Below, piece after piece: positions 1,400-47,247 of a stretch of 64,000 nucleotides of DNA. Under the pieces are notes generated by a model. It had not been told where the DNA came from, did not search any database, and saw only the letters and a program-made list of their open reading frames with translations. The stretch's first letter is position 1. Every line of letters starts with the position of its first letter. This DNA comes from Basidiobolus meristosporus CBS 931.73 (taxonomy: Eukaryota > Fungi > Basidiobolomycota): the NCBI GenBank assembly GCA_002104905.1, contig MCFE01000400.1, positions 1 through 64,000 of the forward strand, read 5' to 3'. The position numbers and the translations under genes were made by a program.

Positions 1400-3250
1400 G
1401 ATAAGTTTGAGAGTTGCGGTTGATGCAGGATGGGACAGCAATAAGAAAGTAAGGGAGTTTGCAAGACATATGGAAGGGTCAGCATGGCAATGGCATTGCG
1501 GGTGGAAAGATGAAGTCAAAGACAACTGGGATACACTAGAAGAAGCCTACAAGATAAGCTTTCTATATGCCAAGGGATATCACTACAAAGCCCTTCTACT
1601 GTCCTCACAGAAGAAAGGCAGTGAGAGCTATGAAGCCTACACTGAACTATTTCTCCAACAGGTTCAATGTCTCCCAGAGGTCAAAATCACTGAGCAACAG
1701 CTCATGAGGTGCTACATCATGGGCTTAGACAACAAAGTAAGAAGTAGGGCACCCAAAGAACAACATGGATAAAAAATGTTGCAAGAGTTGGTTACACAAG
1801 CACAATGGGTCATCTTGCTATGGGGACTACCCTATAGTGATACAAGTGATTAAAGGACAGGGATCCCCCATAAGAAAGGAAAAAATACCTCCCTGAAAGA
1901 CTGTAAGTTATACAAATTACAGCAAAATGTCTAAGAACTCTTAATCAACAATGTCCAAGAAGTAGCCCTGGAGGATTGACCCAAAACCATTTTTATAACA
2001 TAGTTTGATTTATACAAATGGACCCAACTACCCTTTGGCTTGTGTAATGCTCCTGCTATGCTCCAAAGGATGATTGACAAGGTGGAAGGAAATTCACAAT
2101 GGGAATGTGCGCTTGTATATCTAGACAACATCATGATATATTCCCCCAATGTAGAAGAGCATATACACAATGTTCAACGTATCCTGACAGCCCTCCTCAA
2201 GAACCAACTAAAACTACATCCCAAGAAGTGCCATTTTTGGTATACAAAATTGTTGTTCCTGGGCCACAAGATCTCAGCAGATGGGATATACCCATCCACT
2301 TCACTCCTAAAAGCTGTTAAAGATACACCTGCACCAAAGGATATCAATGCAGCTACTATTGCCGCTTTATCAAAAACTTTGTGGCAATAGCAGCCCCCCG
2401 TACAAATTGATGCAAAAAGGCCAGTTTTGTGTGTGGTTGGAGCCTCAAAATGAGCATTGAATCAGCTGAAACATTCCATGATGTCACTACCAGTGGTACA
2501 TTTTCCTTATTGGGATGCAAGATTCTTTATCAACTGTGATGGAAGTCTCATTGGTATAGGCACCTCAAAACATATAGATGTTCAGAAAGACATTTTATTT
2601 GAAAAAAATGATGACCAATGTCACAAATATGTTGCAAAGATGCTCCACCTGCAAGAGATTTAACCAAGGTCAGAAGATAGGGACAACCACACCAATACCA
2701 GATGACCTACCCTTCCACCAGGTAGAGATTGACTTTGTTGGCGCCTTTATCAAAACAAAGAAATGAGTACTCTACAGAGTAATTGCTACTGATTATTTCT
2801 CAAAGCGGGTTGAAGCCCAAGACGTTCAAAATAAAGATCAGAAGACAACCACTCACCTCATCCTAGAGCACCTCATTGGTTGGCATGGATGTCCTCAGGT
2901 ACTCCTGTCCAACAATGGTGGTTCCTTCCTGAACAACACTGTGGCCCATGTGTGCAAAATGATGGGCATGAAACAGATCTTCACAGCTGCATATCACCCC
3001 CAGACCAATGGATTAACCAAGGGGATGAACCGGATGTGTCACTGCATACTGGAGAAGCTTCACTGGGAGCTTCCCCAGTCATGGACCAAGCTGCTTCCAC
3101 TGGCACTCCTAGCAATGTGTACAATACCAAATAAAACAACAGGTTTCTTCCTGTACAAAGTTCTGTAGGGACAAAGGCCCAAGTGGCATGAAGAAGCTAG
3201 ATTGTCAATTAAAGGTGTCCCCTTGACAACACATAATGTCTATGTAGAGA
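1400..3250 (+). pseudogene. Frameshifted, internally deleted gag-pol of the old gypsy element
   Basis: ORF fragments 1398-1772 (gag-like), 2040-2390 (RT), 2457-2663, 2578-2766 and 2941-3168 (integrase core). Confidence 0.85.
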
Positions 3251-33820: not shown

Positions 33821-36800
33821 ATGAGTGAAGAAAAGCCAAAATTTAGCTCTTCAGAAGAAATGTTGGCCTATATTGAGAGTCTTGAACAACAAGTTGCTGA
33901 GTTAGCCGGTCAAGGACAGTCCCACACAACTGAGCCTGCGGCCCTCCCTAGTCTGGACCCAAGAATGGGTAGGCAGACAGACTTGGACTCTTTACATTTT
34001 GTGAACACCCAGAGATCATGGTTTACTGGTCAAGGTATACAGAGAGAGGGTGAAGCCTCATCTGTAAGACCTGCAGTGCCTCCCAATTCCTTGAATCTTG
34101 GAGAAGATGGGCAAGGCTCTCTGGACTTCACAAAACAATATAGAGCAACAAATCTGAAACTTCAGAAACCCAACATCTTTGAAGGCAAAAGACACACTGC
34201 CACTCTAGAGACTTGGATATTTGAAGTAGAGCAGTACCTATACTTCTCAGATGACTCTGAAGAAGTCAAAGTACATTATGCCTGTTCACTTTTCAGAAAG
34301 GAAGCAACCATGTGGTGGAAACTTCACATTCAAGGAATGAATAGGGGCATCTTTCCACCCATAGCCTCCTGGGCTGACTTTGTTAAAGCATTGAGAAAGA
34401 GGTTTACACCTATCAATGCTGATAGAATGGCAAGAGAAAAACTGTCCAAACTCTTTCAAGCCAAGTCTGTTCAAGAGTACAATGAGCAGTTTAACTTGCT
34501 TAGTATGGAAATTCAAAACATGCCTGATACTGAACTACTTGAGCAATACCTAAGAGGCCTGAAATCCAACACTAGATGGGAAATTGAATACAAAGACCCC
34601 AAAACCCTAATAGAGGCTATGGAACTGGCAGAAAGATATGATGCCATACACTTCAGAAGGGCTGTCAACCACAGAATTGGTCACTCAAGAACTACTACAG
34701 GCTTCAAAGCCAATAACCACATACCTATTGGTAGTCAACCAATCACTGAACAAGGTGCACACTACTCCCAAACACTGGAGCCTATGGACCTAGATGTTAT
34801 GCAGAGCACACCAAGACCTTCTAAAGAGGAATGCTTCAAGCTTGGACTATGCTTTTACTGCAAGGAACAGGGTCATAAAGTCAATGAATGCCCAAAGAGG
34901 CCATTACAAAGAGTATTCCAACTCTCCACTAAGGAGGAGGAGCACACAATCAGCCTTGTTAAGGAATATCAGAGGACTCAGAGCTTATATACTACCCCAA
35001 AGATACTGAAACTCCCAGGGATTCTCAACAACAACCAATGTGTCTCTGTACTCATTGACAGTGGAGCAACTGATGTCTACATTGCAAAAGATGTAGCTGA
35101 TCAGATGAAGCTACAAACAATCCCTTGCCCCCCAATTCACATCCTCTGTGCCACCAAGGAATCAATTATAGTGAACAGCAGGACTGAACCCTTGACTTTA
35201 CAAATCAGGGACTTCCAAGACACCATTTCCCCAATTATCATACCCCAAGCCAACTTTGAAATCAATGTGGGACAAACTTGGCTAAGAAAGCACAATCCTG
35301 ACATAAACTGGCAGACTCAGGAAGTTGTAATCAACAAGGATGATGCAAAATATCATCTGTCACCCAAACCAACCCTGGACAAAGGCAATGCACCAGAACA
35401 CACCATATCAAAGAAACAGCTTGCCCACTCTATCAGACAGAATCCCAAACTGTTGCACATGATAGCCTTTGCCAAAATCCAAGAGACCACAGAAGTGACA
35501 AATGACAGGCTCAAGACCTTGTTAGCAGAGTTTCAAGAGGTTTTTCCCAAGGAAATCCCTGCACTACCCCCAAGCAGAGAGATTGACCATGCCATAGAAG
35601 TAACAGATGATAAACCAAGAAACAGAGCCCCATATAAGTTCTCCCCAAAGGAAATGGAGACTTTGAAGGAAACATTGAAGGACTACCTGGCCAAAGGCTG
35701 GATAAAACCCAGTAAATCACCATGGGGAGCTCCAGTACTCTTTGCTCCAAAGAAGGATGGGAAGCTACGGTTCTGTGTGGACTACAGGGCCCTAAATGCA
35801 ATCACTGTCAGAAATTCCTACCCATTACCAAGAATTGATGCCCTCTTTGACCAACTGGGGAAGGCAAAGATATTCTCTAAAATAGACCTGGCATCTGGAT
35901 ATCACCAAATCAGAATTAAGCCTGAAGACACCTCTAAGACAGCATTCAACACAAGATATGGTCATTATGAGTTTGTTGTGATGAGCTTTGGCCTGACTAA
36001 TGCCCCAGCAACATTTCAGACACTCATGAATAGCATCCTGGAACCATATTTAGAGAAATTTGTCCTGGTCTACTTAGATGACATTCTGATCTATAGTACC
36101 AGCATGGATGACCACATGAAGCACTTGAAGACAGTACTGGCTATACTAAAAAAGCACAAGCTATATGCACAACTTCCTAAGTGTGAATTCCTCACCAGAT
36201 CAGTTGAATACCTTGGTCACATAATCTCAGATAAAGGACTACACATGGATCCAGCCAAGATAGATGCTATCCAGAAATGGGAAGCCCCAAAGTCACTCAC
36301 TGAAATGAGATCCTTCCTGGGACTTGCATCATATTACAGAAGATTCATCAGGGACTTTGCAACTATTGCAGCCCCCCTTACAGACTTGACCAAAAAAGAG
36401 AAAGACTATATATGGACCCCAAACTGTGAGACAGCTTTCCTAACTCTGAAAGAAAAGCTATGCCAAACTCCTGTGCTTCAGTTGCCTGATTTCTCAGAAC
36501 CTTTCTGTGTATACACTGATGCTTCAGATCTAGCTGTTGGAGGGGTACTGACTCAAAAAGAACACCCAGTTGCTTATGAGTCCAAAAAGCTATCAGTAAC
36601 TGAACAAAACTACCCAGTCCATGAAAAAGAACTCTATGCCATACTACATTGTCTGAGAGTGTGGAGATGCTACTTGGAGGGCAAACACTTTGTGGTATAT
36701 ACAGATCATGCATCCCTAAGATACATTCACACCCAGAAGCTATTATCCAGAAGAATAACTAGATGGATTGAAGAACTACAACAATTTGATTTTAAAATCC

Positions 36801-38170
36801 ACTACCTCCCTGGGCCAAAGAATACAGTTGCTGATGCACTCTCAAGGCAACATATATCAATGGTAGATCATGAGTTGGACTGGCCAGAATACATGCCAGA
36901 GTACTTGGCAAGTCAGACAATGCCAGAAGATTTATCACAGGAAGTAAGAGTCAAGATTAAGAAAGAAGCAGAGAATTTCTCATATGGTGAAGACGAGGTA
37001 CTTTACAGACACATGGAAGAAATAGGGCCTGTACCATATATTCCATTTGTATACAGAGGTGACATGATAATCAAGAATCATAAAGCCTTTGGACATCTGG
37101 GCATCCAAGGAACTTATGAAATAACTAAAAGGAGAGCCTGGTGGCCTAAACTCAAACAATTTATAGCTGAGACCCTCAAGACCTGCCCTGAGTGCCAGCT
37201 GGCTAGACCATACAACAAGGAACATGCCCCATTAGAACCACTGACTCCAGTTCCAGCATTCTACAGATGGGGAATTGACTTCATTGGAATCTTGCCTGAA
37301 ACTTCAAGAGGGAACAAGTGGATCATAACTGCAATTGACCATACCACTAAGTGGTGTATAGCAAAAGCCATGCCAGCAGCTACTGCAAAAAATGTTGCAA
37401 AATTCCTTTACCTGGAAATCTTTATGCAGTTTGGATGCCCAGGTGAAATTCTGTCTGACAGAGGAGCAAACTTTTTGGAACAAACCTTGAAAGAATACCT
37501 TCAGATAATGGGGGTTAGACATTTGAAGACATCAGCATACCACCCTAGAACAAATGGGGTTACAGAGAGGTTCAATGGACTCTTTGGGAAGATGCTGACT
37601 ACTTATGTCAAAGGAGCCAAACATAAGTGGGATGAATTTGTACATCAAGCACTCTTTGCCTGTCGTATTAGAGTCCATTCAGCAACACAAAAGTCCCCCT
37701 TCTACCTAGTGTATGGTACACATCCAAGAATCCCAGGTGATACCTTACCACCATACATCTGGGACTTAAAGAACCAAAAAGACTTGGCAGAATTCAGAAC
37801 AAGGGAACTGGAAGAATTAGGACATGCAAGACATGATGCCATCAAGAATTTAAAACGACAAGCAGAGAAGATGAAAGAACAGTACAACAAAACAGTGGTA
37901 ACAAAACCCTTAACTTTGGGAAAACTTGTATTAGTCCGAAATGAAAGTAGGCTAAAACTAGAACCACATTGGGTTGGACCCTTTATTATCACAAGAGAAA
38001 TGCCCTTCAACACATTTCAACTCGCAGACATGTCAGGTAAAGTAAAGGAGGACCTAGTGCATAGAGACCGACTAAAGGAAGCACAGCTAAAAAACCCAAT
38101 GACACCACCAACCAAATACTGGTATTACAAGTCCGATAGACAGGACTCTTCAGGAGAAGAACCTCTTTAA
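33821..38170 (+). CDS. Gag-Pol polyprotein, single ORF, 1449 aa (gag, CCHC knuckle, protease, RT, RNase H, integrase; no chromodomain seen)
   Basis: [14 protein letters not shown]; LIDSGAT; YLDDILIYS; YTDASD; H-x4-H...CPEC; GIDFIG / SDRG / TERFNG; GPF motif. Confidence 0.98.
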
Positions 38171-38181
38171 GTGTGGGAGTA
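38171..38181 (+). promoter_or_regulatory. Polypurine tract-like sequence before the 3' LTR
   Basis: GTGTGGGAGTA immediately precedes TGTT. Confidence 0.6.
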
Positions 38182-38491
38182 TGTTATGATTTAAATCCTA
38201 ACTAGTCACTACCGATCACTTGAACACTACTGATCGAACACCTGGAATTCCACACAGACGATCAATTGCACTCAGTGATACACACGTTATTTAATACATC
38301 TTGAACCCTCCTTTTGGAAGCTTGCCCTACGTTATCGGAAGCTCTCCCTCCGAGGCTATCTCTATATAAACTCCTTTGAACACTATCAATAAAGCATCAA
38401 CCTTTTACCGGTTCATCAACTATTCAGATAACCTCTCTGATTCGTATTGGACATCCTCCGGTCCTCCTCCGCTTGCCCTCGATTCATAACA
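38182..38491 (+). repeat. 3' LTR
   Basis: Matches 33090-33399 and retains 12 CpGs (counted by eye). Confidence 0.98.
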
Positions 38492-38502
38492 AACCCAAGT
38501 TC

Positions 38503-38574
38503 GCCTGCTTAGCGCAGTGGTAGCGCGTCAGTCTCGTAAACTGAAGGTCGCCAGTTCAATCCTGGCAGTAGGCA
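38503..38574 (+). tRNA. tRNA-Thr(CGT), intronless, 72 nt
   Basis: Acceptor GCCTGCT/AGTAGGC+A, D stem GCGC/GCGC, anticodon stem TCAGT/ACTGA with loop CT-CGT-AA, T stem GCCAG/CTGGC with TTCAATC. A T-rich terminator (TTTATTTT) follows. Confidence 0.95.
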
Positions 38575-39460
38575 TTTATTTTAATATTGAATAAATCAAG
38601 ATGGTCACCAACTCAACTCACCCACCACAAGGATGGAAATGGTCGACCATGTCAAGATTGAGGCGACCCCAGTGTCACCTCCTTCGGGATCCCCTGACAC
38701 CGGAGAAAACCCAAAGGTTACAGGGAAGGTAGGCCTCACACATGAGTCAACCCGAACGCCCTGCTGGAGGTGGGGGTGGGAGTGTGTGATGATATGATAT
38801 CAGTGAATTTCAAACCATCAATGGCATGGTTTCGTCCGAAAAGGGCCAAACATATGCACGACAATAAGCCTCATATTCTGGACTGGCCCCTAATTCTGAT
38901 TTTGTGCATAGCTGCAAGTGGAGCCTATATCGGATGTTGGTAGTTTCTGGGAAGGAGTTCTGATGCACTACCTGGGGTATTAGATTGTTCACCCAGAGTT
39001 GAGGAGCCGATGGTACATCAAGAGTCCATTCCTTGTCCATCGATGATGATAGGAGTTTCTTGAAGATGAATGCCAGAAGGATGTATATCTGCAAACCCAA
39101 TTGTGATTCTTTTAATTTCTTTGCAGGTGAGTTCAAGTTCACTACCGCTAATGTAGGTAAGAAAGAAAAGGATGTAGGCAGGAATCCCATTGGGTTATTT
39201 GACCGGGCTGTGATGAATCAATTTACTGACGCCCTAGCCCATTGAGTTCACAACGCCAAGTGGGCTGGATTTCACCCCCAGTATGCGTGTCGATCAGGTT
39301 CTTCCTCCCCAGCCAAGCTCTCGCTCAGATTATGTGGTTTGAATGGATTGGTATTCTTGGCAGGTAGATATGTCACTTGGCAACTCTTCTTATAAATGTC
39401 GAACCTCGCTGATCCTCCGAACACAACATCCCATTACCACTGATTCATACCAACGCAGCC

Positions 39461-39769
39461 ATGCAACTCACAAAGCTAACCTTGATCACTGCCCTCTTCG
39501 CTGTCATCATGGCCCAGTCTCCCACCCCGACCGTGGTCACAACCACCAGTCCTGGCTCTACCGCCACCACACCTGCTACTACCACTGCCAACAACGGAGG
39601 GGTCTTCCCAAGCATCTGGAACAAGGTCACCTCGGGGATCGCATCTGTCCCATCACACGTTCGCAACGCCACCGAGGATGTGTTTGGGAACTCTGGGGAG
39701 CGAGTGAACCTTTCACTCGGCAGTGTGATGCTCACGGGCGGGGCACTATGGTATCAAATGAGGGCCTGA
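39461..39769 (+). CDS. Small secreted, putatively GPI-anchored protein, family copy 1 (102 aa)
   Basis: Signal peptide MQLTKLTLITALFAVIMA, T/S/P stalk, conserved VFPSIWNKVTSGIASVPSHVRNATEDVFGNSG, hydrophobic tail. TATAAA at 39391. Four paralogs nearby. Confidence 0.88.
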   Translation: MQLTKLTLITALFAVIMAQSPTPTVVTTTSPGSTATTPATTTANNGGVFPSIWNKVTSGIASVPSHVRNATEDVFGNSGERVNLSLGSVMLTGGALWYQMRA

Positions 39770-40263
39770 TTGAGAGTGATCGAAAGGAACTAGCATTTGA
39801 ACCAACACAATTCTATACAGCCCATGCATTCTGTCCCACCATCCTTGCTCCATGATATGTAACATACCTAAGTCAGTTAATAAATGCCTACAGTGATCTC
39901 ACCACCTGATTGTTGAGATATCCCTCCATCCAACCAATTGGTGGTAGTCGATGAACCCCGATGGAAAACACACTCTCTGTATCACCTTTTATGCTACATT
40001 CGGAACTGGTTGACAATGATCAGGATTGGCATTGAACCGCATTACCCTCGACAGTGGTGTTCGTGTACACCATTCGGAGTTTCCTCGCATTGAACATAAT
40101 TAGCACAAAAGAATAACCACCAGTCGGTGCACCCATTCTGTCACCTTACAACAACGACCTTGGGTCCTTGACTCATCGCTGGCCCTCTGGTGGAGTATAA
40201 AACGCTCCCCCGCCTCTTCCTCTGCCACCCACTCGAGTTCCTTACCCCCCCCCTCCGTCCATA

Positions 40264-40509
40264 ATGAAGTTCTCCATCCTTTTGTCCGCTGTTGCCGCCC
40301 TCTACATCACCGGAGCGGATGCCGCCTGCTACTGCCTCTCCGCCACCGGAAAAGGGACATTCTGCGGATTCCAACTGACCGGTGACTCGTGCGTGACCGA
40401 TCATCTCTACCAATGCAATGGCTACCGCCAGCCGGTATTCCAAGACCTAGGAAAGTGCGCCAACGGATGTCAAGGAACCTACCCATCCCAGAGCGACCAC
40501 TGCAAATGA
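40264..40509 (+). CDS. Secreted cysteine-rich peptide, copy 1 (81 aa, 8 Cys)
   Basis: Signal peptide MKFSILLSAVAALYITGADA. Mature spacing CxC-x9-C-x8-C-x7-C-x13-C-x3-C-x10-C. TATAAAA ~65 bp upstream. Confidence 0.9.
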   Translation: MKFSILLSAVAALYITGADAACYCLSATGKGTFCGFQLTGDSCVTDHLYQCNGYRQPVFQDLGKCANGCQGTYPSQSDHCK

Positions 40510-40660
40510 AGGCATAACGCACGCAGTAGGTTATTCCCTCAAAACAGCCTAGATCTAATTGGCAGCAATGCTGCATCTTTGACAAGGAATTAATAAAAGT
40601 CGAGGTGATACGGATGAGTTCTTGAGAATAATCGACTGAAACTGGTGGGGATAGGGAGAA

Positions 40661-40691
40661 TGGTACTGGTACTGGTACTGGTACTGGTACT
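40661..40691. repeat. (TGGTAC)5 microsatellite
   Basis: Read directly from the sequence. Confidence 0.95.
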
Positions 40692-41343
40692 ATGACTGAT
40701 AGATAAGAATTAGGAGGTTGAACTTAGAGGCCAAACCATAGCGAACGAGCTCACTTGACCAGAAGTAGAAACGCGGTCAAACACATTTCCCCGTGACCAA
40801 GGTGAGCAATCTCTCTGCATCACGCACAGGTTTGGATCTTCAATACATGCCCGAACCTCTCACTCCCCCACCCCCACAATGCACCGATGAAATAGGCATT
40901 GCATCACCCAATTCGTAATCGATGATATTTCACCAGATCACCCAAACCCGACATATAGACACACGAATCAGTTCCAATTCAGACAAAATGTCCCCCAGGT
41001 ATTACCCAACCAACCAATGAATAGCAGCCTACGAACCTCGATAGAAAGCCTGCCTGCTGTACCACCCATCATGCTACGTTCGGAACTGGTTGACAATGAT
41101 CAGGATTGGCATTGAACCGCATTACCCTCGACAGTGGTGCTCGTGTACACCATTCGGAGTTTCCTCGCATTGAACATAATTAGCACAAAAGAATAACCAC
41201 CAGTCGGTGCACCCATCCTGTCACCTTACAACAACGACCTTGAGTCCTTGACTCATCGCTGGCCCTCTGGTGGAGTATAAAACGCTCCCCCGCCTCTTCC
41301 TCTGCCACCCACTCGAGTTCCTTACCCCCCCCCTCCGTCCATA

Positions 41344-41589
41344 ATGAAGTTCTCCATCCTTTTGTCCGCTGTTGCCGCCCTCTACATCACCGGAGCGGAT
41401 GCCGCCTGCTACTGCCTCTCCGCCACCGGAAAAGGGACATTCTGCGGATTCCAACTGACCGGTGACTCGTGCGTGACCGATCATCTCTACCAATGCAATG
41501 GCTACCGCCAGCCGGTGTTCCAAGACCTAGGAAAGTGCGCCAACGGATGTCAAGGAACCTACCCATCCCAGAGCGACCACTGCAAATGA
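41344..41589 (+). CDS. Secreted cysteine-rich peptide, copy 2 (protein identical to copy 1)
   Basis: Same 81-aa sequence; one synonymous GTA/GTG difference seen. Confidence 0.9.
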   Translation: MKFSILLSAVAALYITGADAACYCLSATGKGTFCGFQLTGDSCVTDHLYQCNGYRQPVFQDLGKCANGCQGTYPSQSDHCK

Positions 41590-41988
41590 AGGCACAACCC
41601 TCGCCGTAGGTAATGATCGTAATGGGCCCTCCCCTCCAAAATAGCCAAGTTGCACGACACATTAATTTCCCATCCACGCTGCGGCCCATACAAGGAATGA
41701 ATAAAGTGGAAGTGATCAAGACGTCATATGGGATACGACATGCTTCATTATAGACGGTGTGCCCCGGTTGTAGTACCAGCATTCCGACGATAAAACGCAA
41801 CGTCGTCTGCGCGGTTGAGATGAGCGATGACTACATATTGGTATGGGATCGATCGGAGGTTCGCTTTGGGGAGGTTTATTGGCTGATTGTGGTATGTTAC
41901 ATATCATGGAGCAAGGATGGTGTGAGGAATGGTTTGGCTAGTGTACAATATTGGAAGTGTGGACACGAAATAGATCACCTCACCCCAA

Positions 41989-42297
41989 CTACGCATTCAT
42001 TTGGTACAGGAGCACTCCACCTGTGAGCATCACACTGCCGAGTGAAAGGTTCACTCGCTCCCCAGAGTTCCCAAACACATCCTCGGTGGCATTGCGAACG
42101 TGTGATGGGACAGATGCGATTCCCGAGGTGACCTTGTTCCAGATGCTTGGGAAGACCCCTCCGTTGTTGGCAGTGGTAGTAGCAGGAGTGGTGGCGGTAG
42201 AGCCAGGGCTGGTGGTTGTGACCACGGTCGGGGTGGGAGACTGGGCCATGATACCTGCGATGAGAGCAGTGATCAAGGTTAGCTTTGTGAGTTGCAT
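41989..42297 (-). CDS. Small secreted, putatively GPI-anchored protein, copy 2 (102 aa)
   Basis: Start at the internal MQLTK ATG, by comparison with copy 1. Shares the promoter and TATA box. Confidence 0.88.
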   Translation of the reverse strand: MQLTKLTLITALIAGIMAQSPTPTVVTTTSPGSTATTPATTTANNGGVFPSIWNKVTSGIASVPSHVRNATEDVFGNSGERVNLSLGSVMLTGGVLLYQMNA

Positions 42298-43017
42298 GGC
42301 TGCGTTGGTATGAATCAGTGGTAATGGGATGTTGTGCTTCGGAGGATCAGCGAGGTTCGACATTTATAAGAAGAGTTGCCAAGTGACATATCTATCTGCC
42401 AAGAATACCAATCCATTCAAACCGCATTATCTGAGCCAGAGCTCGGCTGGGGAGGCAGAGCCCGATCGACACGGATGCAAACTGAGAGATCCAGCCGGCT
42501 TGGCATGACCGAGTAAATCGGGGATTCGATGGGCTTGGGCGTCAGGTAGATAGATTGATCACAGCCCGGATAAATCTGGAATTACGCGTCGTTCCTGGCT
42601 TGGTTAGAACAGGTTGAGGTGTGAGAGATGAGCTCAAGTGACCATGAGGTTCCAGTTGCTCCATTTGCCCTTTCGTACAGCTACGCCAGCACGCCTCAAA
42701 TAGACTTCTGTTGCTCGATGTCTTTTTGCTCGCATTAGGCTTGCTGCCAGTCAATGCGTAAGAGTGGTACGGTTATTTCACAAGGACTTGAGGGAATCCA
42801 GCGTGTTATTTATTTCGCATTTGAGGATGATCATCCAGGGTGCATCACCGACACTCCGATCAAGAAATACCGGTCCAAGGGAGGCTAGGATCTATTCTTA
42901 AGAGACGAGCTCAATGAGTGTTTATTGACTGGCTTGGGTATGTTACATATCAGAGGGCAATGGTGTGAGCTAGTGTACAACATAGAAAGCGCGAATGCGA
43001 ATTAAACTCCACCCCAG

Positions 43018-43326
43018 TTACGCATTCATTTGGTATAGGAGCACTCCACCGGTGAGCATCACACTGCCGAGTGAAAGGTTCACTCGCTCCCCAGAGTTCC
43101 CAAACACATCCTCGGTGGCGTTGCGAACGTGTGATGGGACAGATGCGATTCCCGAGGTGACCTTGTTCCAGATGCTTGGGAAGACCCCTCCGTTGTTGGC
43201 AGTGGTAGTAGCAGGGGTGGTGGCGGTAGAGCCAGGGCTGGTGGTTGTGACCACGGTCGGGGTGGGAGACTGGGCCATGATACCTGCGATGAGAGCAGTG
43301 ATCAAGGTTAGCTTTGTGAGTTGCAT
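43018..43326 (-). CDS. Small secreted, putatively GPI-anchored protein, copy 3 (protein identical to copy 2)
   Basis: Tandem duplicate of copy 2 at offset 1029 bp; only synonymous differences were seen. Confidence 0.88.
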   Translation of the reverse strand: MQLTKLTLITALIAGIMAQSPTPTVVTTTSPGSTATTPATTTANNGGVFPSIWNKVTSGIASVPSHVRNATEDVFGNSGERVNLSLGSVMLTGGVLLYQMNA

Positions 43327-43999
43327 GGCTGCGTTGGTATGAATCAGTGGTAATGGGATGTTGTGTTCGGAGGATCAGCGAGGTTCGACATTTATAAGAA
43401 AAGAGGTGCCAAGTGGCATATCTACATGCCAAGAATACCAATTCATTCAGATCACGAGTTAAGGGATCAAATGTTGGCCGGCTTGGCGAGAGCTAGTGGA
43501 TTAGGTATTCGATGGGCTTAGGATATGTGGAAGGCTGATTGAAATTCGATTCAAGATTCATCATAGCCCGGCCTAAAATGGAAGCCCAATTCCCTACTAT
43601 TGGCCACTCACTCAACATGATGCAACTAGTGGAGGGTTGGATGTACAATGACTTGCGGCAAACCAGACAAGCTCTTCGCCGCGACCGATCTATCATTCAT
43701 GCGCCTGTGGGGAAGGGCTGGATCACCGCCAAGTCTACCAGGTAGAATGGAACGAGCACAGATACGTATTGGGAACACTCTGGGGTATATGTAGATACAT
43801 TAGGAATTTGCATCAGCAGGTGTAACAATTGTTTTTTATTCACATCTGGGCAATGCAATTGAAAGTCCCATTGTGGCTCGGGATCTACATGGATATGGCA
43901 CAGAGACAGGTGCCCCTGATGGTGGACGCAAATGCTGGCAAGTTGAGACAACGCGATGTGAGTGTGGATGCGGATGCGCTCAGAGATCCTCTTCCTTAC

Positions 44000-44317
44000 T
44001 TAGACGCCCATCTGGTATAGAATCGCTCCACTGCCAAGCACCAAACCGCCAAGCGAAAGGTCGATTCGGGCCCCAGAGTTGCCGAACACACTGTGAGTCG
44101 TGTTCCGGATGTTTGACGGTGCAGCGGCAATACCGGAGGTGATCTTATTCCAAATACTCGGGAACACTCTTGATTTACCCGCAGTGGTGCGAGCAGTGGT
44201 GCTAATGGGGCTGGCGAGGCTTGTTGAGGTAGCTGTCGGAGCTGGAGTTGGAGTTGAAGACTGGGCCATAGTGTTAGTGAGGAGAGCGGCAATCAATATT
44301 TGCTGGATGAGATGCAT
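44000..44317 (-). CDS. Small secreted, putatively GPI-anchored protein, copy 4 (105 aa, diverged)
   Basis: MHLIQQILIAALLTNTMAQS...VFPSIWNKITSGIAAAPSNIRNTTHSVFGNSG...LSLGGLVLGSGAILYQMGV; start inferred from paralogs. Confidence 0.87.
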   Translation of the reverse strand: MHLIQQILIAALLTNTMAQSSTPTPAPTATSTSLASPISTTARTTAGKSRVFPSIWNKITSGIAAAPSNIRNTTHSVFGNSGARIDLSLGGLVLGSGAILYQMGV

Positions 44318-44642
44318 GGTATGGTGAAACACGATAGAAGTTACGTTGAATGAATGGAACCATTGCTTGTATTTATAATGGTGGATGCACCAAGATTCCC
44401 TTTCTACGGGCTGGATACGAGGGATAGACGGCCACTTGTTGGTCGAAGGAAAGACCTTGATGGGAGGATGAAAGTATGATAGACACACCAGGATCCAACG
44501 TAGATAGATTACTGATGGAGGTACGATGCAACCAATACTCATGGTCAGGTTAAAATGAAGCATTTATTAAAGTCGGTATGCAGATACATATCCTTTGCTG
44601 TATACATTATGCATATATGATGAGATAGATAAGATCAACGAA

Positions 44643-44951
44643 CTAAGCCCTCATTTGAAGCAGAAGCACTCCGCTGGTGAGCATCACGCCCCCCAGCGAA
44701 AGGTAGACGCGCGCCCCAGAGTTGTTGCCGAATACATCGTTCGTGGCATTACGAATGTTCGACGGTGCCGCAGCAATACCGGAGGTGATCTTGTTCCATA
44801 CGCTCGGAAACACCCCCGCCTCACTGGTGGTAGTGGCAGGAGTAGCGGTGATAGCGCTGGAGACACTTGACGAGGCAGAAGTCGGAGCCGGCGACTGAGC
44901 CGTAACGCTAGCGAGGAGAGCGGCAATGAAAGTGGCTTTGAAGAAGTGCAT
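44643..44951 (-). CDS. Small secreted, putatively GPI-anchored protein, copy 5 (102 aa, diverged)
   Basis: MHFFKATFIAALLASVTAQS...VFPSVWNKITSGIAAAPSNIRNATNDVFGNNSG...; TATAAA upstream at ~45000. Confidence 0.87.
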   Translation of the reverse strand: MHFFKATFIAALLASVTAQSPAPTSASSSVSSAITATPATTTSEAGVFPSVWNKITSGIAAAPSNIRNATNDVFGNNSGARVYLSLGGVMLTSGVLLLQMRA

Positions 44952-45060
44952 GGTGATGGGTTGTATGGTGACGGTAGTGGGAACTCGCCTGCGTAGTCTT
45001 TATAGAAACGAACCGCTTGGGCTTGGTTGGGCTGGAGCAAAGGCTAAGTCAGATGGTATA

Positions 45061-45100
45061 GGGTATGGGTAAGGGTAAGGGTAAGGGTAAGGGTAAGGGT
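45061..45100 (+). repeat. (GGGTAA)n hexamer tract with seven GGG runs; potential G-quadruplex
   Basis: GGGTATGGGTAAGGGTAAGGGTAAGGGTAAGGGTAAGGGT is read directly. Confidence 0.9.
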
Positions 45101-45461
45101 ACGGTAACATAGGGAGATGTCTTAACGAATGCTAATGCGATGACCGAATTTAGAAGCAACAAGGTTCCAAAAAACCGGAGTGCTGAGCATCTCTTGATGC
45201 AGGGACAGCAGCAATGAGGAACCATTGCGATCAGGGAAATCCATTGTAAATTGGATTTCATAAAACCATGATGCAGTCGTGCATACCATTCAAGGTGAAT
45301 CCACCCTATTGTTCCGCACAATAGATCGACAATAGACCATCTCCCTGCTCTCGACATGCACCCCTTATTGCACGCAACATCCGTGGATAAATACCCAACG
45401 GCTCTCCACCGGAATCGTCAGTTCATCTCATCTCCATCCACATCTTCCCAACCAAGTCAAC

Positions 45462-45584
45462 ATGCGCTTCAACGTTGCCCTCTGCACTTTCATCGCCCTC
45501 CTCGTCTTCACATCCGTGGTCGTGGACGCGCAAGGAGCGAAAGGTCAGCCCGCCGCCAAGGGGAAGAAGGGCTCCAAACAGTAA
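45462..45584 (+). CDS. 40-aa secreted cationic micropeptide (not in the ORF track)
   Basis: MRFNVALCTFIALLVFTSVVVDA|QGAKGQPAAKGKKGSKQ*. Good start context (CAACATGC), GATAAATA ~75 bp upstream, AATAAA downstream at ~45737. Confidence 0.65.
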   Translation: MRFNVALCTFIALLVFTSVVVDAQGAKGQPAAKGKKGSKQ

Positions 45585-45858: not shown

Positions 45859-46632
45859 TTATTTAGCAATGCCGAGGTTGGAATTCAGATCCAACGACTC
45901 CTCCAACTCGACCAGCTGGCAAATCAAGCTCATGTTCGGGCAAATCGAATCACTACGCGATTTCACGTAGTCGTAGGCTTCGTTGACATTCATTCGTAAA
46001 GCACGCATAACGTACGCGATCATAAGACTTGCTGAGCGTGACACGCCAAGCTGACAGTGCACAAGTATACCCAGCTGCTTGGAACGCGCCTCGTCGATGA
46101 ATCGGAAGGCGTCCTGGAAGGATTTGAAAATGTTCTCCTCGTTGTGTCCCCAAGCCAGGCTTTTGTATCTCAGGATACGGGTGGGATCAGCGAGACAATC
46201 CCCATCCAGCTGAAGGGTGTACGATACGATGGATGGTGTGGTCGGGGACACCACCCCCTCAAAATACGGGGGATCTACCTCTTTGGCAACATTCAAGATG
46301 TAATGGATATCGTTTGTGACCAGCATCTCCTGATCACGAGCGTTCTTCTCGCAACCTAGGAATAGAAAGGGCAGAATGCATATTGGGCCAGCGTTGTATG
46401 AATCTTGCTGTCCAGGGCTGGTCTCCCCAGCGATCTGAAGCTGGTTGACCTGTTGTGTGATGGAGGTTGTGGGTGTCTCGACGACTTTTCCGCTGGTTTC
46501 AGTCGCCCCGCACCCCTTTGGAACGATTAACGACAGATTCTTCGAGTTGCGCCGTTTGTTCCTCAGAGGAGGCTTTTTCGCGAGAGAGGGGAATGGGGAG
46601 GTGGAGATGGGTTTGGAGAAGGCAAGGGTCAT
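45859..46632 (-). CDS. Dual-specificity (MAP kinase) phosphatase, Msg5/Pmp1-like
   Basis: Catalytic VHCQLGVSRS; LFLG, ILNVA and CPN motifs; N-terminal KRRNSKNLSL resembles the Msg5 docking segment. Start placed at MTLAFS, since the upstream ORF extension translates a microsatellite. Confidence 0.92.
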   Translation of the reverse strand: MTLAFSKPISTSPFPSLAKKPPLRNKRRNSKNLSLIVPKGCGATETSGKVVETPTTSITQQVNQLQIAGETSPGQQDSYNAGPICILPFLFLGCEKNARDQEMLVTNDIHYILNVAKEVDPPYFEGVVSPTTPSIVSYTLQLDGDCLADPTRILRYKSLAWGHNEENIFKSFQDAFRFIDEARSKQLGILVHCQLGVSRSASLMIAYVMRALRMNVNEAYDYVKSRSDSICPNMSLICQLVELEESLDLNSNLGIAK

Positions 46633-46633
46633 G

Positions 46634-46658
46634 GTTTCGTTTCGTTTCGTTTCGTTTC
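46634..46658. repeat. (GTTTC)5 microsatellite just upstream of the phosphatase ATG
   Basis: Read directly from the sequence. Confidence 0.9.
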
Positions 46659-47247
46659 GGACGGGGGGAAGGGGACGAATTCTGGCGAAAGGATCAAATA
46701 AGACAGGGAGCAGCGTCGGCTCTTTCCACATTATATGCGATGACACGGGATGATCAAATAATTCCATCAGGCAAGATTAGAGGCTAATTTTGGACACTGG
46801 GAAAATTCATTGCCACCCTCTATTAGACGGGATTAACAACAGGCCAGATGATTGGCAGGTGTCGTTTCAGGTCGAGCATCATTGAGCTTCTTCGGCCCAT
46901 GTGATATGGATGCTTATTGAAGTGCCAATATGCTTCGGCCATATACGAGGTTAATACCCTTCGTTTTGGTCAATATACGTCCAGATTTGCTATTCTAGGC
47001 GGCATGCGAGGCCCAAATAAGCTAGATACCACCAAGTTGTGCTTAATATCCATATATATGGCCCAATGAGTCCAGCCACAAAAGTCGGTGAACCGTGTAC
47101 TGGAGATGGACAGGACCACCACTGTTTCCTTGATTAGCCCTCATGTGACAAGCAGCGGTGGGTTCGATCGTACCACCGCGCTTCCATGGATCGATTCTGG
47201 ATTGATTAGGGACTGGATGCGATGGTTGATTCTGGATTTATTCAGGA

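What the first reader, a model, noticed from the sequence alone, without database searches (positions are those of the whole stretch)
39461..44951. Five-member micro-protein family with a conserved amphipathic helix next to a putative GPI anchor
Seen: signal peptide, mature N-terminal Gln, a variable T/S/P stalk, then a conserved core VFPS(I/V)WNK(V/I)TSGIA(S/A)(V/A)PS(H/N)(V/I)RN(A/T)TxxVFGN(N)SG, a short spacer and a hydrophobic tail. Hydrophobic residues in the core recur every 3-4 positions (F2, I5/W6, V9, I13, V16, V20, V27/F28) with a Pro kink, and an N-x-T sequon is kept in all five. Copies 1-3 have identical predicted mature regions and differ only in the signal and tail or at synonymous sites, which suggests purifying selection or gene conversion. 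The order is unusual: GPI proteins normally carry the functional domain distal and the stalk proximal, but here the conserved helix is membrane-proximal. Inference: it lies on or bends the membrane or binds lipid, or it is released as a membrane-active peptide.
Basis: partly seen in the sequence, partly recalled or inferred. Interest (0 to 1): 0.76.

Follow-up and report, generated by a model that had tools for sequence, protein, structure and literature searches.

The report
Basidiobolus-only small GPI-type surface glycoprotein family
Five tiny neighbouring genes in the fungus Basidiobolus meristosporus encode a genus-restricted family of secreted, sugar-coated proteins that are probably lipid-anchored; a 30-residue segment next to the anchor site is under very strong selection, and public annotation has mostly missed or mis-framed the genes.

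Summary
Five intact ORFs of 102-105 codons lie at the stated coordinates. All have a signal peptide, an Ala|Gln cleavage site, a 28-32 aa Ser/Thr/Pro stalk, a conserved ~30-aa core, an invariant N-S-G triad and a weakly hydrophobic tail.

They are real genes.
- Between diverged copies and three B. ranarum homologues, synonymous sites are saturated while the core has dN 0.04-0.15 (omega about 0.03-0.07).
- Each has a TATA box and a downstream AATAAA.
- The locus is syntenic in B. ranarum, next to a dual-specificity phosphatase gene and a myotubularin gene.

Copies 1-3 are alike because of recent duplication or gene conversion. Their noncoding -100 bp is 96-99% identical too, and identity drops at the core/tail junction.

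No relative was found outside Basidiobolus, in Pfam, PDB, 1.84 billion protein representatives, prokaryote genomes or metagenomes.

The amphipathic periodicity is real (moment 0.51-0.58, top 0.2-2.4% of shuffles). AlphaFold gives helix-kink-helix only at low confidence. Rule-based GPI features are met loosely; no GPI predictor or RNA data could be run.

The released membrane-active peptide reading is not supported.

Verdict: a new orphan family within a known kind, mucin-like GPI microproteins. First readers noted the same stretch twice more as a secreted-gene cluster.

The parts
39461..39769 (+). Copy 1 (102 aa): signal 1-18, stalk 19-47, core 48-76, omega triad N77-S78-G79, tail 80-102
   Evidence: ORF and alignment. 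Core DNA is 39596-39697. TATAAAT at 39391-39397 and AATAAA at 39879-39884. The public annotation instead calls an overlapping 157-aa model in another frame.
41989..42297 (-). Copy 2 (102 aa), protein identical to copy 3
   Evidence: Core is 42061-42162. TATA at 42362-42368 and AATAAA at 41875-41880. The public 124-aa model (P0001) starts at the ATG that lies inside the TATA box at 42363. The matching ATG in c1 runs into a stop, so the extension is probably wrong.
43018..43326 (-). Copy 3 (102 aa), tandem duplicate of copy 2 (1029-bp unit)
   Evidence: Four synonymous and no non-synonymous differences from c2. Core is 43090-43191. TATA at 43390-43396 and AATAAA at 42921-42926. The public annotation calls a 150-aa model in the wrong frame.
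44000..44317 (-). Copy 4 (105 aa), diverged: 55% identical to c1, sequon NTT
   Evidence: Core is 44072-44173. TATA at 44371-44377 and AATAAA at 43835-43840. Not annotated publicly; an antisense multi-exon model covers it.
44643..44951 (-). Copy 5 (102 aa), diverged: 60% identical to c1, one extra Asn before the triad (G-N-N-S-G)
   Evidence: Core is 44715-44819. TATAAAG at 44998-45004 and AATAAA at 44563-44568. Not annotated publicly. It is the copy closest to the syntenic DSPc gene at 45859-46767.

Best explanation
These are five intronless paralogous genes of a Basidiobolus-restricted family of surface microproteins.

Inferred pathway, from rules:
- The precursor enters the ER through an 18-residue signal peptide cut at Ala18|Gln19.
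- The 28-32 residue stalk, about half Ser/Thr, is O-mannosylated, and the single N-x-T in the core is N-glycosylated.
- The C-terminal 25 or so residues are removed, and a GPI anchor is added at the invariant Asn of the G-N-S-G motif.

The mature product is a glycopeptide of about 59 residues. Its only sequence-constrained part is a 30-residue helix / Pro-kink / helix module joined directly to the anchor.

Proposed working, inferred and favoured but unproven: the module sits at the outer face of the plasma membrane, or at the membrane/wall junction. F49, W53, V56 and I60 of helix 1 and V67, V74 and F75 of helix 2 face the lipid or a specific partner. The N-glycan (N69, on the polar face) and the mucin-like stalk project outward as a coat.

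The cluster grew by local tandem and inverted duplication with gene conversion, at a locus shared with B. ranarum.
For: Real, constrained genes:
- Core dN is 0.04-0.15, with synonymous sites saturated, in c1/c4/c5/r1/r2 comparisons. Omega is 0.03-0.07 where computable. Stalk and tail have dN 0.19-1.08 but keep their composition.
- All 8 ORFs are intact. All have a TATA-like box, at -53 to -71 in seven and -134 in r3. All have a purine at -3 and AATAAA 54-164 nt after the stop.
- B. ranarum annotators independently called the three homologues in this frame.
- Synteny: the myotubularin - DSPc - family gene order is found in L001, L002 and the window.

Secretion and GPI:
- The signal hydrophobic core scores KD 2.0-2.6, and A18 and Q19 are invariant.
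- The N-S-[G/A] triad is invariant in 8 of 8. After it come a 2-6 residue polar spacer, a 15-17 residue run, and only 3-5 terminal residues.
- The fungal omega pattern quoted in PMC12387857 is matched in 8 of 8 when its C-terminal end anchor is relaxed.
- The tail is too weakly hydrophobic for a stable TM helix. The best 15-mer scores KD 1.35-2.27, and a crude Hessa-scale sum for the best 19-mer is +3.0 to +6.9 (scale values from memory).
- Conservation stops abruptly at the triad, as expected if the tail is a discarded targeting signal.
- About 10% of zygomycete secretomes are predicted GPI-anchored (PMC9391592).

Helix:
- The 18-mer moment is 0.51-0.58, and the 12-mer moment about 0.6.
- On the helical wheel, F49, W53, V56 and I60 fall on one face and N69 on the opposite face of helix 2.
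- AF2 on the core gives helix-kink-helix.

Orphan status.
Against: - No GPI predictor could be run.
- The strict form of the fungal pattern, which as I recall the original requires the last 10 residues all to be from the allowed set, fails in 8 of 8. A Gln, Arg or Asn sits within the last 3-5 residues.
- A Y-Q-[M/L] motif near the C-terminus is kept in 6 of 8 members. This is odd for a discarded signal.
- AF2 confidence is low: pLDDT 50.8 for the full length, with only two short helices, and 64.7 for the core alone.
- The core is rich in Gly, Ser, Thr and Pro, which disfavour a helix in water.
- Both faces of the putative helix are conserved, so amphipathicity may reflect packing within a small fold or oligomer rather than membrane contact.
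- Whether the protein stays on the membrane or is transferred to wall glucan is unknown.
Confidence: 0.6

Rival explanations
1. GPI-dependent cell-wall protein. After anchoring, the GPI remnant is transglycosylated to wall glucan. The conserved core is then a wall-side module, for example a recognition or cross-linking site for the transfer enzymes or for a wall polymer, and not a membrane-lying helix.
For: - It has the same targeting features as the best explanation.
- No dibasic residues lie just upstream of the omega site. In yeast such residues retain proteins in the membrane (from memory: Caro 1997, Hamada 1999).
- The polar residues of the core are invariant, which suggests specific recognition.
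- The nearest language-model look-alikes are small fungal S/T-rich wall proteins such as KRE1 and CFEM clusters. Scores are only 0.77-0.87, so these are leads only.
Against: - The yeast wall-targeting rule (V/I/L at omega-4/-5, Y/N at omega-2) is not met if the omega site is N77.
- The yeast rules are untested in Zoopagomycota.
- No PIR repeat or other known wall-linkage motif is present, and Pfam gives nothing.
- The strong helical periodicity would be left unexplained.
Confidence: 0.2
2. Single-pass type I membrane microprotein. The C-terminal hydrophobic stretch is kept as a transmembrane anchor with a 3-5 residue cytosolic end, and the core is a juxtamembrane helix.
For: - A hydrophobic C-terminal segment is present in all members.
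- [G/S]G..L.YQ[M/L] is partly conserved in 7 of 8 tails, more than a discarded signal needs.
- The strict GPI end pattern is not met.
Against: - The segment is short (15-17 residues) and rich in Gly, Ser and Thr. The best 15-mer KD is 1.35-2.27, and the crude insertion-energy sum is +3 to +6.9.
- It is preceded by a textbook small-residue triad that is the most conserved spot in the protein.
- Tail dN between species is 0.45-1.08.
Confidence: 0.12
3. Precursor of a freely released peptide, either membrane-active or antimicrobial or a signal.
For: - The products are small and secreted.
- The core is amphipathic.
- The genes sit in a cluster with other tiny secreted-protein genes near a chromosome end.
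Against: - No conserved Kex2-type or other processing site lies on either side of the core.
- Core net charge is 0 to +2, so it is not cationic.
- Omega of about 0.05 is the opposite of the fast evolution usual for antimicrobial peptides.
- A C-terminal hydrophobic tail would be unnecessary.
Confidence: 0.05
4. Receptor or self-protection partner for the neighbouring 81-aa Cys-rich secreted proteins, in the way GPI-anchored Kre1p serves as a killer-toxin receptor.
For: - Two Cys-rich genes are interleaved between c1 and c2.
- A KRE1 cluster appears among the weak look-alikes, at 0.81.
Against: - In B. ranarum the family genes occur without a Cys-rich neighbour, and the Cys-rich homologue lies on another contig.
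- There is no KRE1 Pfam match.
- Nothing shows that the Cys-rich protein is a toxin.
Confidence: 0.03

Closest known systems
Small yeast GPI cell-wall mannoproteins (Cwp2, Ccw12; from memory)
   Same: The precursor is about 90-130 aa, with a signal peptide, a Ser/Thr-rich O-mannosylated region, a C-terminal GPI signal, no Cys-rich domain, and multiple copies in the genome.
   Different: There is no sequence similarity and no PIR or Ccw12 repeat (Pfam blank). In this family the conserved module abuts the omega site and the stalk is distal, the reverse of the usual fungal layout.
Mucin-like GPI glycopeptides of other eukaryotes (mammalian CD24/CD52, plant arabinogalactan peptides, trypanosomatid mucins; from memory)
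   Same: A very short, heavily glycosylated mature peptide is held on the outer leaflet by GPI. The genes form lineage-specific, locally amplified families.
   Different: Those are analogues only. They lack a strongly conserved amphipathic anchor-proximal segment, and no homology was detectable.
[quoted passage not shown]
   Same: Both are fungal S/T-rich GPI surface proteins. PF10342 is the commonest GPI family in zygomycete secretomes (PMC9391592).
   Different: Neither profile matches at E <= 1. KRE1 appears only as a weak embedding neighbour at 0.81.
ALPS-type amphipathic lipid-packing sensor helices (from memory)
   Same: Bulky hydrophobic residues (F, W, I, V) recur every 3-4 positions, and the polar face is made almost only of Ser, Thr, Gly and Asn with few charges.
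   Different: ALPS motifs are cytosolic, longer (20-40 residues), and poorly conserved in sequence. This segment is extracytoplasmic, interrupted by a Pro, carries an N-glycan site, and is nearly invariant.

Membership tests
GPI-anchored proteins (class) | N-terminal ER signal peptide | tested here: met
   The hydrophobic 12-mer scores KD 2.0-2.6. A18|Q19 is invariant, with Ala at -1 and a small or aliphatic residue at -3, in 8 of 8. This is rule-based; no SignalP was available.
GPI-anchored proteins (class) | Omega triad of small residues (omega, omega+1, omega+2) | tested here: met
   N-S-G in seven members and N-S-A in one, invariant across both species.
GPI-anchored proteins (class) | Polar spacer, then a hydrophobic stretch reaching the C-terminus (fungal pattern quoted in PMC12387857) | tested here: inconclusive
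   The pattern without the end anchor is matched in 8 of 8. The strict version, with the last 10 residues all from the allowed set, fails in 8 of 8 because of a Q, R or N in the last 3-5 residues.
GPI-anchored proteins (class) | Positive call by a trained predictor (NetGPI, PredGPI, big-PI), or PI-PLC release | not testable with these tools
Pfam PF10342 / PF17056 KRE1 / PIR-repeat wall proteins | Match to the family profile | tested here: not met
   hmmscan against Pfam-A at E <= 1 gave no family for c4 or c5. For c1 it gave only a sub-threshold low-complexity hit (New_glue, 12.4 bits against a cut-off of 31).
Cationic amphipathic antimicrobial peptides | Net positive charge, a processing site that releases the peptide, and rapid evolution | tested here: not met
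   Core net charge is 0 to +2. No conserved dibasic site is present. Omega is about 0.05.
Amphipathic in-plane membrane helices (functional class) | High helical hydrophobic moment with a coherent hydrophobic face | tested here: met
   The 18-mer moment is 0.51-0.58, against a shuffle mean of about 0.30. Helix 1 has a moment of 0.635, with F49, W53, V56 and I60 within 35 degrees of the moment direction.
Amphipathic in-plane membrane helices (functional class) | Demonstrated or confidently predicted helicity and lipid binding | tested here: inconclusive
   AF2 gives helix-kink-helix, but at pLDDT 64.7 for the core alone and below 50 in the full-length model. Lipid binding is not testable here.

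The most novel reading that the evidence does not exclude
The family may be a previously undescribed kind of outer-leaflet protein. In this reading a GPI anchor holds an ALPS-like, Ser/Thr/Gly-faced amphipathic helix-kink-helix flat on the extracellular membrane surface. There it would sense or shape lipid packing, or organise the membrane/wall interface, beneath a mucin-like brush. The near-invariance of the 30-residue module over saturated synonymous divergence would then reflect a specific lipid or protein partner unique to Basidiobolus.
Probability: 0.12. Interest if true: 0.65.

Novelty: new member of a known kind. Interest (0 to 1): 0.36.

Why it matters
- It adds a well-supported, genus-restricted gene family to a poorly studied early-diverging fungus, a gut symbiont of amphibians and reptiles and an occasional human pathogen.
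- It shows that short intronless secreted-protein genes are systematically mis-modelled in the public annotation. Of the five copies, one has an over-extended N-terminus that hides the signal peptide, two are called in a wrong overlapping frame, and two are missing under an antisense model. Secretome surveys of zygomycetes would therefore not have seen the family.
- The 30-residue anchor-proximal module is small enough for direct biophysical tests. If it does bind the outer leaflet, it would be an unusual use of an amphipathic helix on the extracellular side.

Tried and rejected
Searches that found nothing:
- Pfam scan of c1, c4 and c5: nothing above threshold.
- PDB sequence search with the core profile at E <= 10: 0 hits.
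- Exhaustive HMMER profile search of 1.84 billion representatives: only Basidiobolus proteins, plus one spurious repeat protein, P0005.
- Pattern plus tblastn scans of prokaryote genomes and JGI metagenomes: none confirmed. The genome collection holds only bacteria and archaea, so it says nothing about fungi.
- ESM Atlas feature search: best score 0.87, below the 0.9 line.
- Literature searches: no description of the family or a close analogue.
- The search of earlier findings by sequence: blank, which means nothing here.

Tools not used or not available:
- Fold search was not run, because both models are of low confidence and a 34-residue helix pair would match anything.

Readings rejected:
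- A possible sixth copy at window 2019-2144 lies in a retroelement RT remnant.
- The overlapping alternative-frame ORFs (39343-39855 + and 42950-43441 -), which the public annotation uses, are not the coding frame. They are absent from c2, c4, c5 and B. ranarum, and the family frame shows omega far below 1 with saturated dS.
- The in-frame upstream extensions of c2 (to 42363) and c4 (to 44563) are not the start. They begin at or upstream of the TATA box and are not shared by the other copies.

Full report
**What is there**

The window is from Basidiobolus meristosporus CBS 931.73, contig MCFE01000400.1, 81,339 bp.

The left 38 kb is AT-richer (38-43% GC) and carries retroelement sequence. This includes an intact Ty3/gypsy ORF at 33821-38170. 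From about 38 kb the GC content rises to 47-51% and ordinary genes appear: a dual-specificity phosphatase (DSPc), a myotubularin-like gene, a PPR protein and a sugar transporter.

The five ORFs of the finding lie at this boundary:

| Copy | Coordinates | Strand |
|---|---|---|
| c1 | 39461-39769 | + |
| c2 | 41989-42297 | - |
| c3 | 43018-43326 | - |
| c4 | 44000-44317 | - |
| c5 | 44643-44951 | - |

c1-c3 are 95% identical as proteins, and c2 equals c3. c4 and c5 are 55-60% identical to c1. tblastn finds exactly these five in the window and no fragments. The one weak extra hit, at 2019-2144, is in a reverse-transcriptase remnant.

**Are they genes?**

Yes, on four independent grounds.

1. Selection. 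Nei-Gojobori counts on a codon alignment show saturated synonymous sites (dS above 1, or not computable) between c1, c4, c5 and the B. ranarum homologues r1 and r2. The core meanwhile has dN 0.04-0.15, so omega is 0.03-0.07 where it can be computed. The signal, stalk and tail change much faster (dN 0.19-1.08) but keep their character. This pattern fixes the reading frame and rules out DNA-level constraint.
2. Gene signals. All eight genes have a TATA-like box. It lies at -53 to -71 from the ATG in seven, and at -134 in r3. All have a purine at -3 and an AATAAA 54-164 nt after the stop.
3. Independent annotation. The annotators of B. ranarum called three homologues in this frame: P0002 (96 aa), P0003 (99 aa) and P0004 (91 aa).
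4. Synteny. In both B. ranarum loci the genes follow a myotubularin gene and a DSPc gene in the same orientation, as in the window. The copy number there is 1 in L001 and 2 in L002, against 5 here.

**How the cluster arose**

- c2 and c3 are a 1029-bp tandem duplication.
- c1 is an inverted copy.
- Two identical 81-codon Cys-rich genes, a 1080-bp tandem, lie between c1 and c2.

Along c1 versus c2 and c3, identity varies by segment:

| Segment | Identity |
|---|---|
| Noncoding -100..-1 | 97-99% |
| Signal | 91% |
| Stalk and core | 98-99% |
| Tail | 81% |
| Downstream | about 60% |

Synonymous differences are 7.5 of 17 sites in the tail against 4 of 50 in stalk plus core (Fisher p = 0.001). 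So the identity of the mature parts of c1-c3 comes from recent duplication or a gene-conversion tract that ends near the omega site. It is not due to selection. Selection is what keeps the core constant among the older copies. A small tree groups c1-3, c4+c5 and r1+r2 separately, with moderate support. This suggests expansion or homogenisation within each species.

**Relatives**

None was found outside the genus.

- Pfam gives nothing.
- The word search finds only B. ranarum proteins.
- An exhaustive profile search of 1.84 billion representatives gives only P0003, P0004 and a spurious repeat protein.
- PDB sequences give none.
- Prokaryote genomes and metagenomes give none.
- Embedding neighbours all score below 0.9. 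They are small fungal hypothetical proteins, KRE1 and CFEM clusters, that is, S/T-rich surface proteins. This is a lead only.

**Anatomy and likely working**

Signal peptide: the hydrophobic core scores KD 2.0-2.6, with an invariant Ala18|Gln19.

Stalk: 24-32 residues in the seven close members and 15 in r3. About half are Ser/Thr, the rest largely Pro and Ala, with no Cys.

Core: V-F-P-S-[IV]-W-N-[KR]-[VI]-T-S-G-I-A-[SA]-[VA]-P-S-x-[VI]-R-N-[AT]-T-x-x-V-F-G.

Triad and tail: the invariant N-S-[G/A] follows the core. After it come 22-26 residues, made of a short polar spacer, a 15-17 residue Gly/Ser/Thr-rich hydrophobic run and 3-5 end residues.

The case for a GPI attachment signal with omega at Asn77 rests on four points.

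- The triad fits the omega, omega+1, omega+2 rule.
- The fungal pattern quoted in PMC12387857 is met in 8 of 8 without its end anchor. The strict form fails because of a Gln, Arg or Asn near the end.
- The run is too short and too weak for a stable transmembrane helix. The best 15-mer scores KD 1.35-2.27, and a crude Hessa-scale sum is +3 to +6.9 (scale from memory).
- Sequence conservation stops exactly at the triad.

This is rule-based inference; no GPI predictor was available.

**The amphipathic helix**

- The best 18-mer helical moment is 0.51-0.58 in all eight members, against about 0.30 for shuffles, and 0.2-2.4% of shuffles reach it. The beta moment is low.
- On a helical wheel, F49, W53, V56 and I60 lie within 35 degrees of the moment of helix 1 (moment 0.635). 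In helix 2, V67 and V74 face one way and the sequon Asn69 faces the opposite way.
- AF2 on the whole protein is uninformative: pLDDT 50.8, with short helices at 53-58 and 67-74. On the core alone it gives helix 49-61, a break around Pro64, then helix 65-76, at pLDDT 64.7.

The periodicity is therefore real, and helicity is plausible but not established.

Two features argue against a generic membrane-active peptide.

- The polar and small residues (N54, T57, S58, G59, S65, R68, N69, T71) are as invariant as the hydrophobic ones.
- Net charge is 0 to +2, and no processing site is present.

I therefore favour a tethered, specific anchor-proximal module. It would lie on the outer leaflet or at the membrane/wall junction under a glycan brush. 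A wall-linked variant of the same idea is the main rival.

**Public annotation**

In GCA_002104905.1 the five copies are treated as follows:

| Copy | Public model |
|---|---|
| c2 | Right frame, but started at an ATG inside the TATA box (124 aa), which buries the signal peptide |
| c1 | Overlapping wrong-frame model of 157 aa |
| c3 | Overlapping wrong-frame model of 150 aa |
| c4, c5 | Not called; they lie under an antisense multi-exon model of 153 aa |

The two Cys-rich genes are fused into one 136-aa two-exon model.

**Limits**

- There is no trained GPI or signal-peptide predictor here.
- The rest of the B. meristosporus genome could not be searched for further copies.

Noticed in passing
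window 40264-40509 (+) and 41344-41589 (+): Two identical 81-codon genes for a signal-peptide, 8-Cys secreted protein form a 1080-bp tandem. They have no Pfam match, and the only relative found is a B. ranarum hypothetical protein (P0007, 74% identical, on another contig). The public annotation fuses the two copies into one 136-aa two-exon model (P0006).
   Followed up: partly
window 45462-45584 (+); L001 7369-7473 (-): The 40-codon signal-plus-Lys/Gly-rich ORF between c5 and the DSPc gene has a counterpart at the syntenic place in B. ranarum (tblastn 50% over 40 aa, E 5.5e-6). It may therefore be a real conserved micro-gene.
   Followed up: partly
window 39382-39855 (+), 42950-43402 (-), 43889-45584 (+): Three public gene models of GCA_002104905.1 look wrong here. 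Two are wrong-frame ORFs over c1 and c3. One is an antisense multi-exon model over c4 and c5 that ends in the 40-codon ORF.
   Followed up: yes
window 45055-45101: A hexanucleotide microsatellite, (GGTAAG) x 7.7, lies just upstream of c5's TATA box. It resembles the usual TTAGGG telomere unit but is not identical to it.
   Followed up: no
L001 and L002 (B. ranarum JASJQH010000302.1, JASJQH010000497.1): B. ranarum carries two paralogous segments with the order myotubularin - DSPc - family gene. r1 and r2 differ at saturated synonymous sites, so this is an old segmental duplication and not two haplotypes. B. meristosporus may hold a second such locus that could not be searched.
   Followed up: partly
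L002 7278-7553 (+): The divergent family member r3 (P0004, 91 aa) keeps W-[ND]-K-[IV]-T-S-G, A-S-V-P-S and V-F-G-N-S. It lacks the F-P-S start and the N-x-T sequon, and it has the most hydrophobic tail. It marks the minimal conserved set of the family.
   Followed up: partly
window 38000-39400 vs L002 9337-10790: In B. ranarum a tyrosinase gene follows the family genes. In the window the corresponding side is occupied by the duplicated copies, and then by a Ty3/gypsy element and AT-rich retroelement debris. The GC content steps from about 41% to about 50% at about 38 kb.
   Followed up: no
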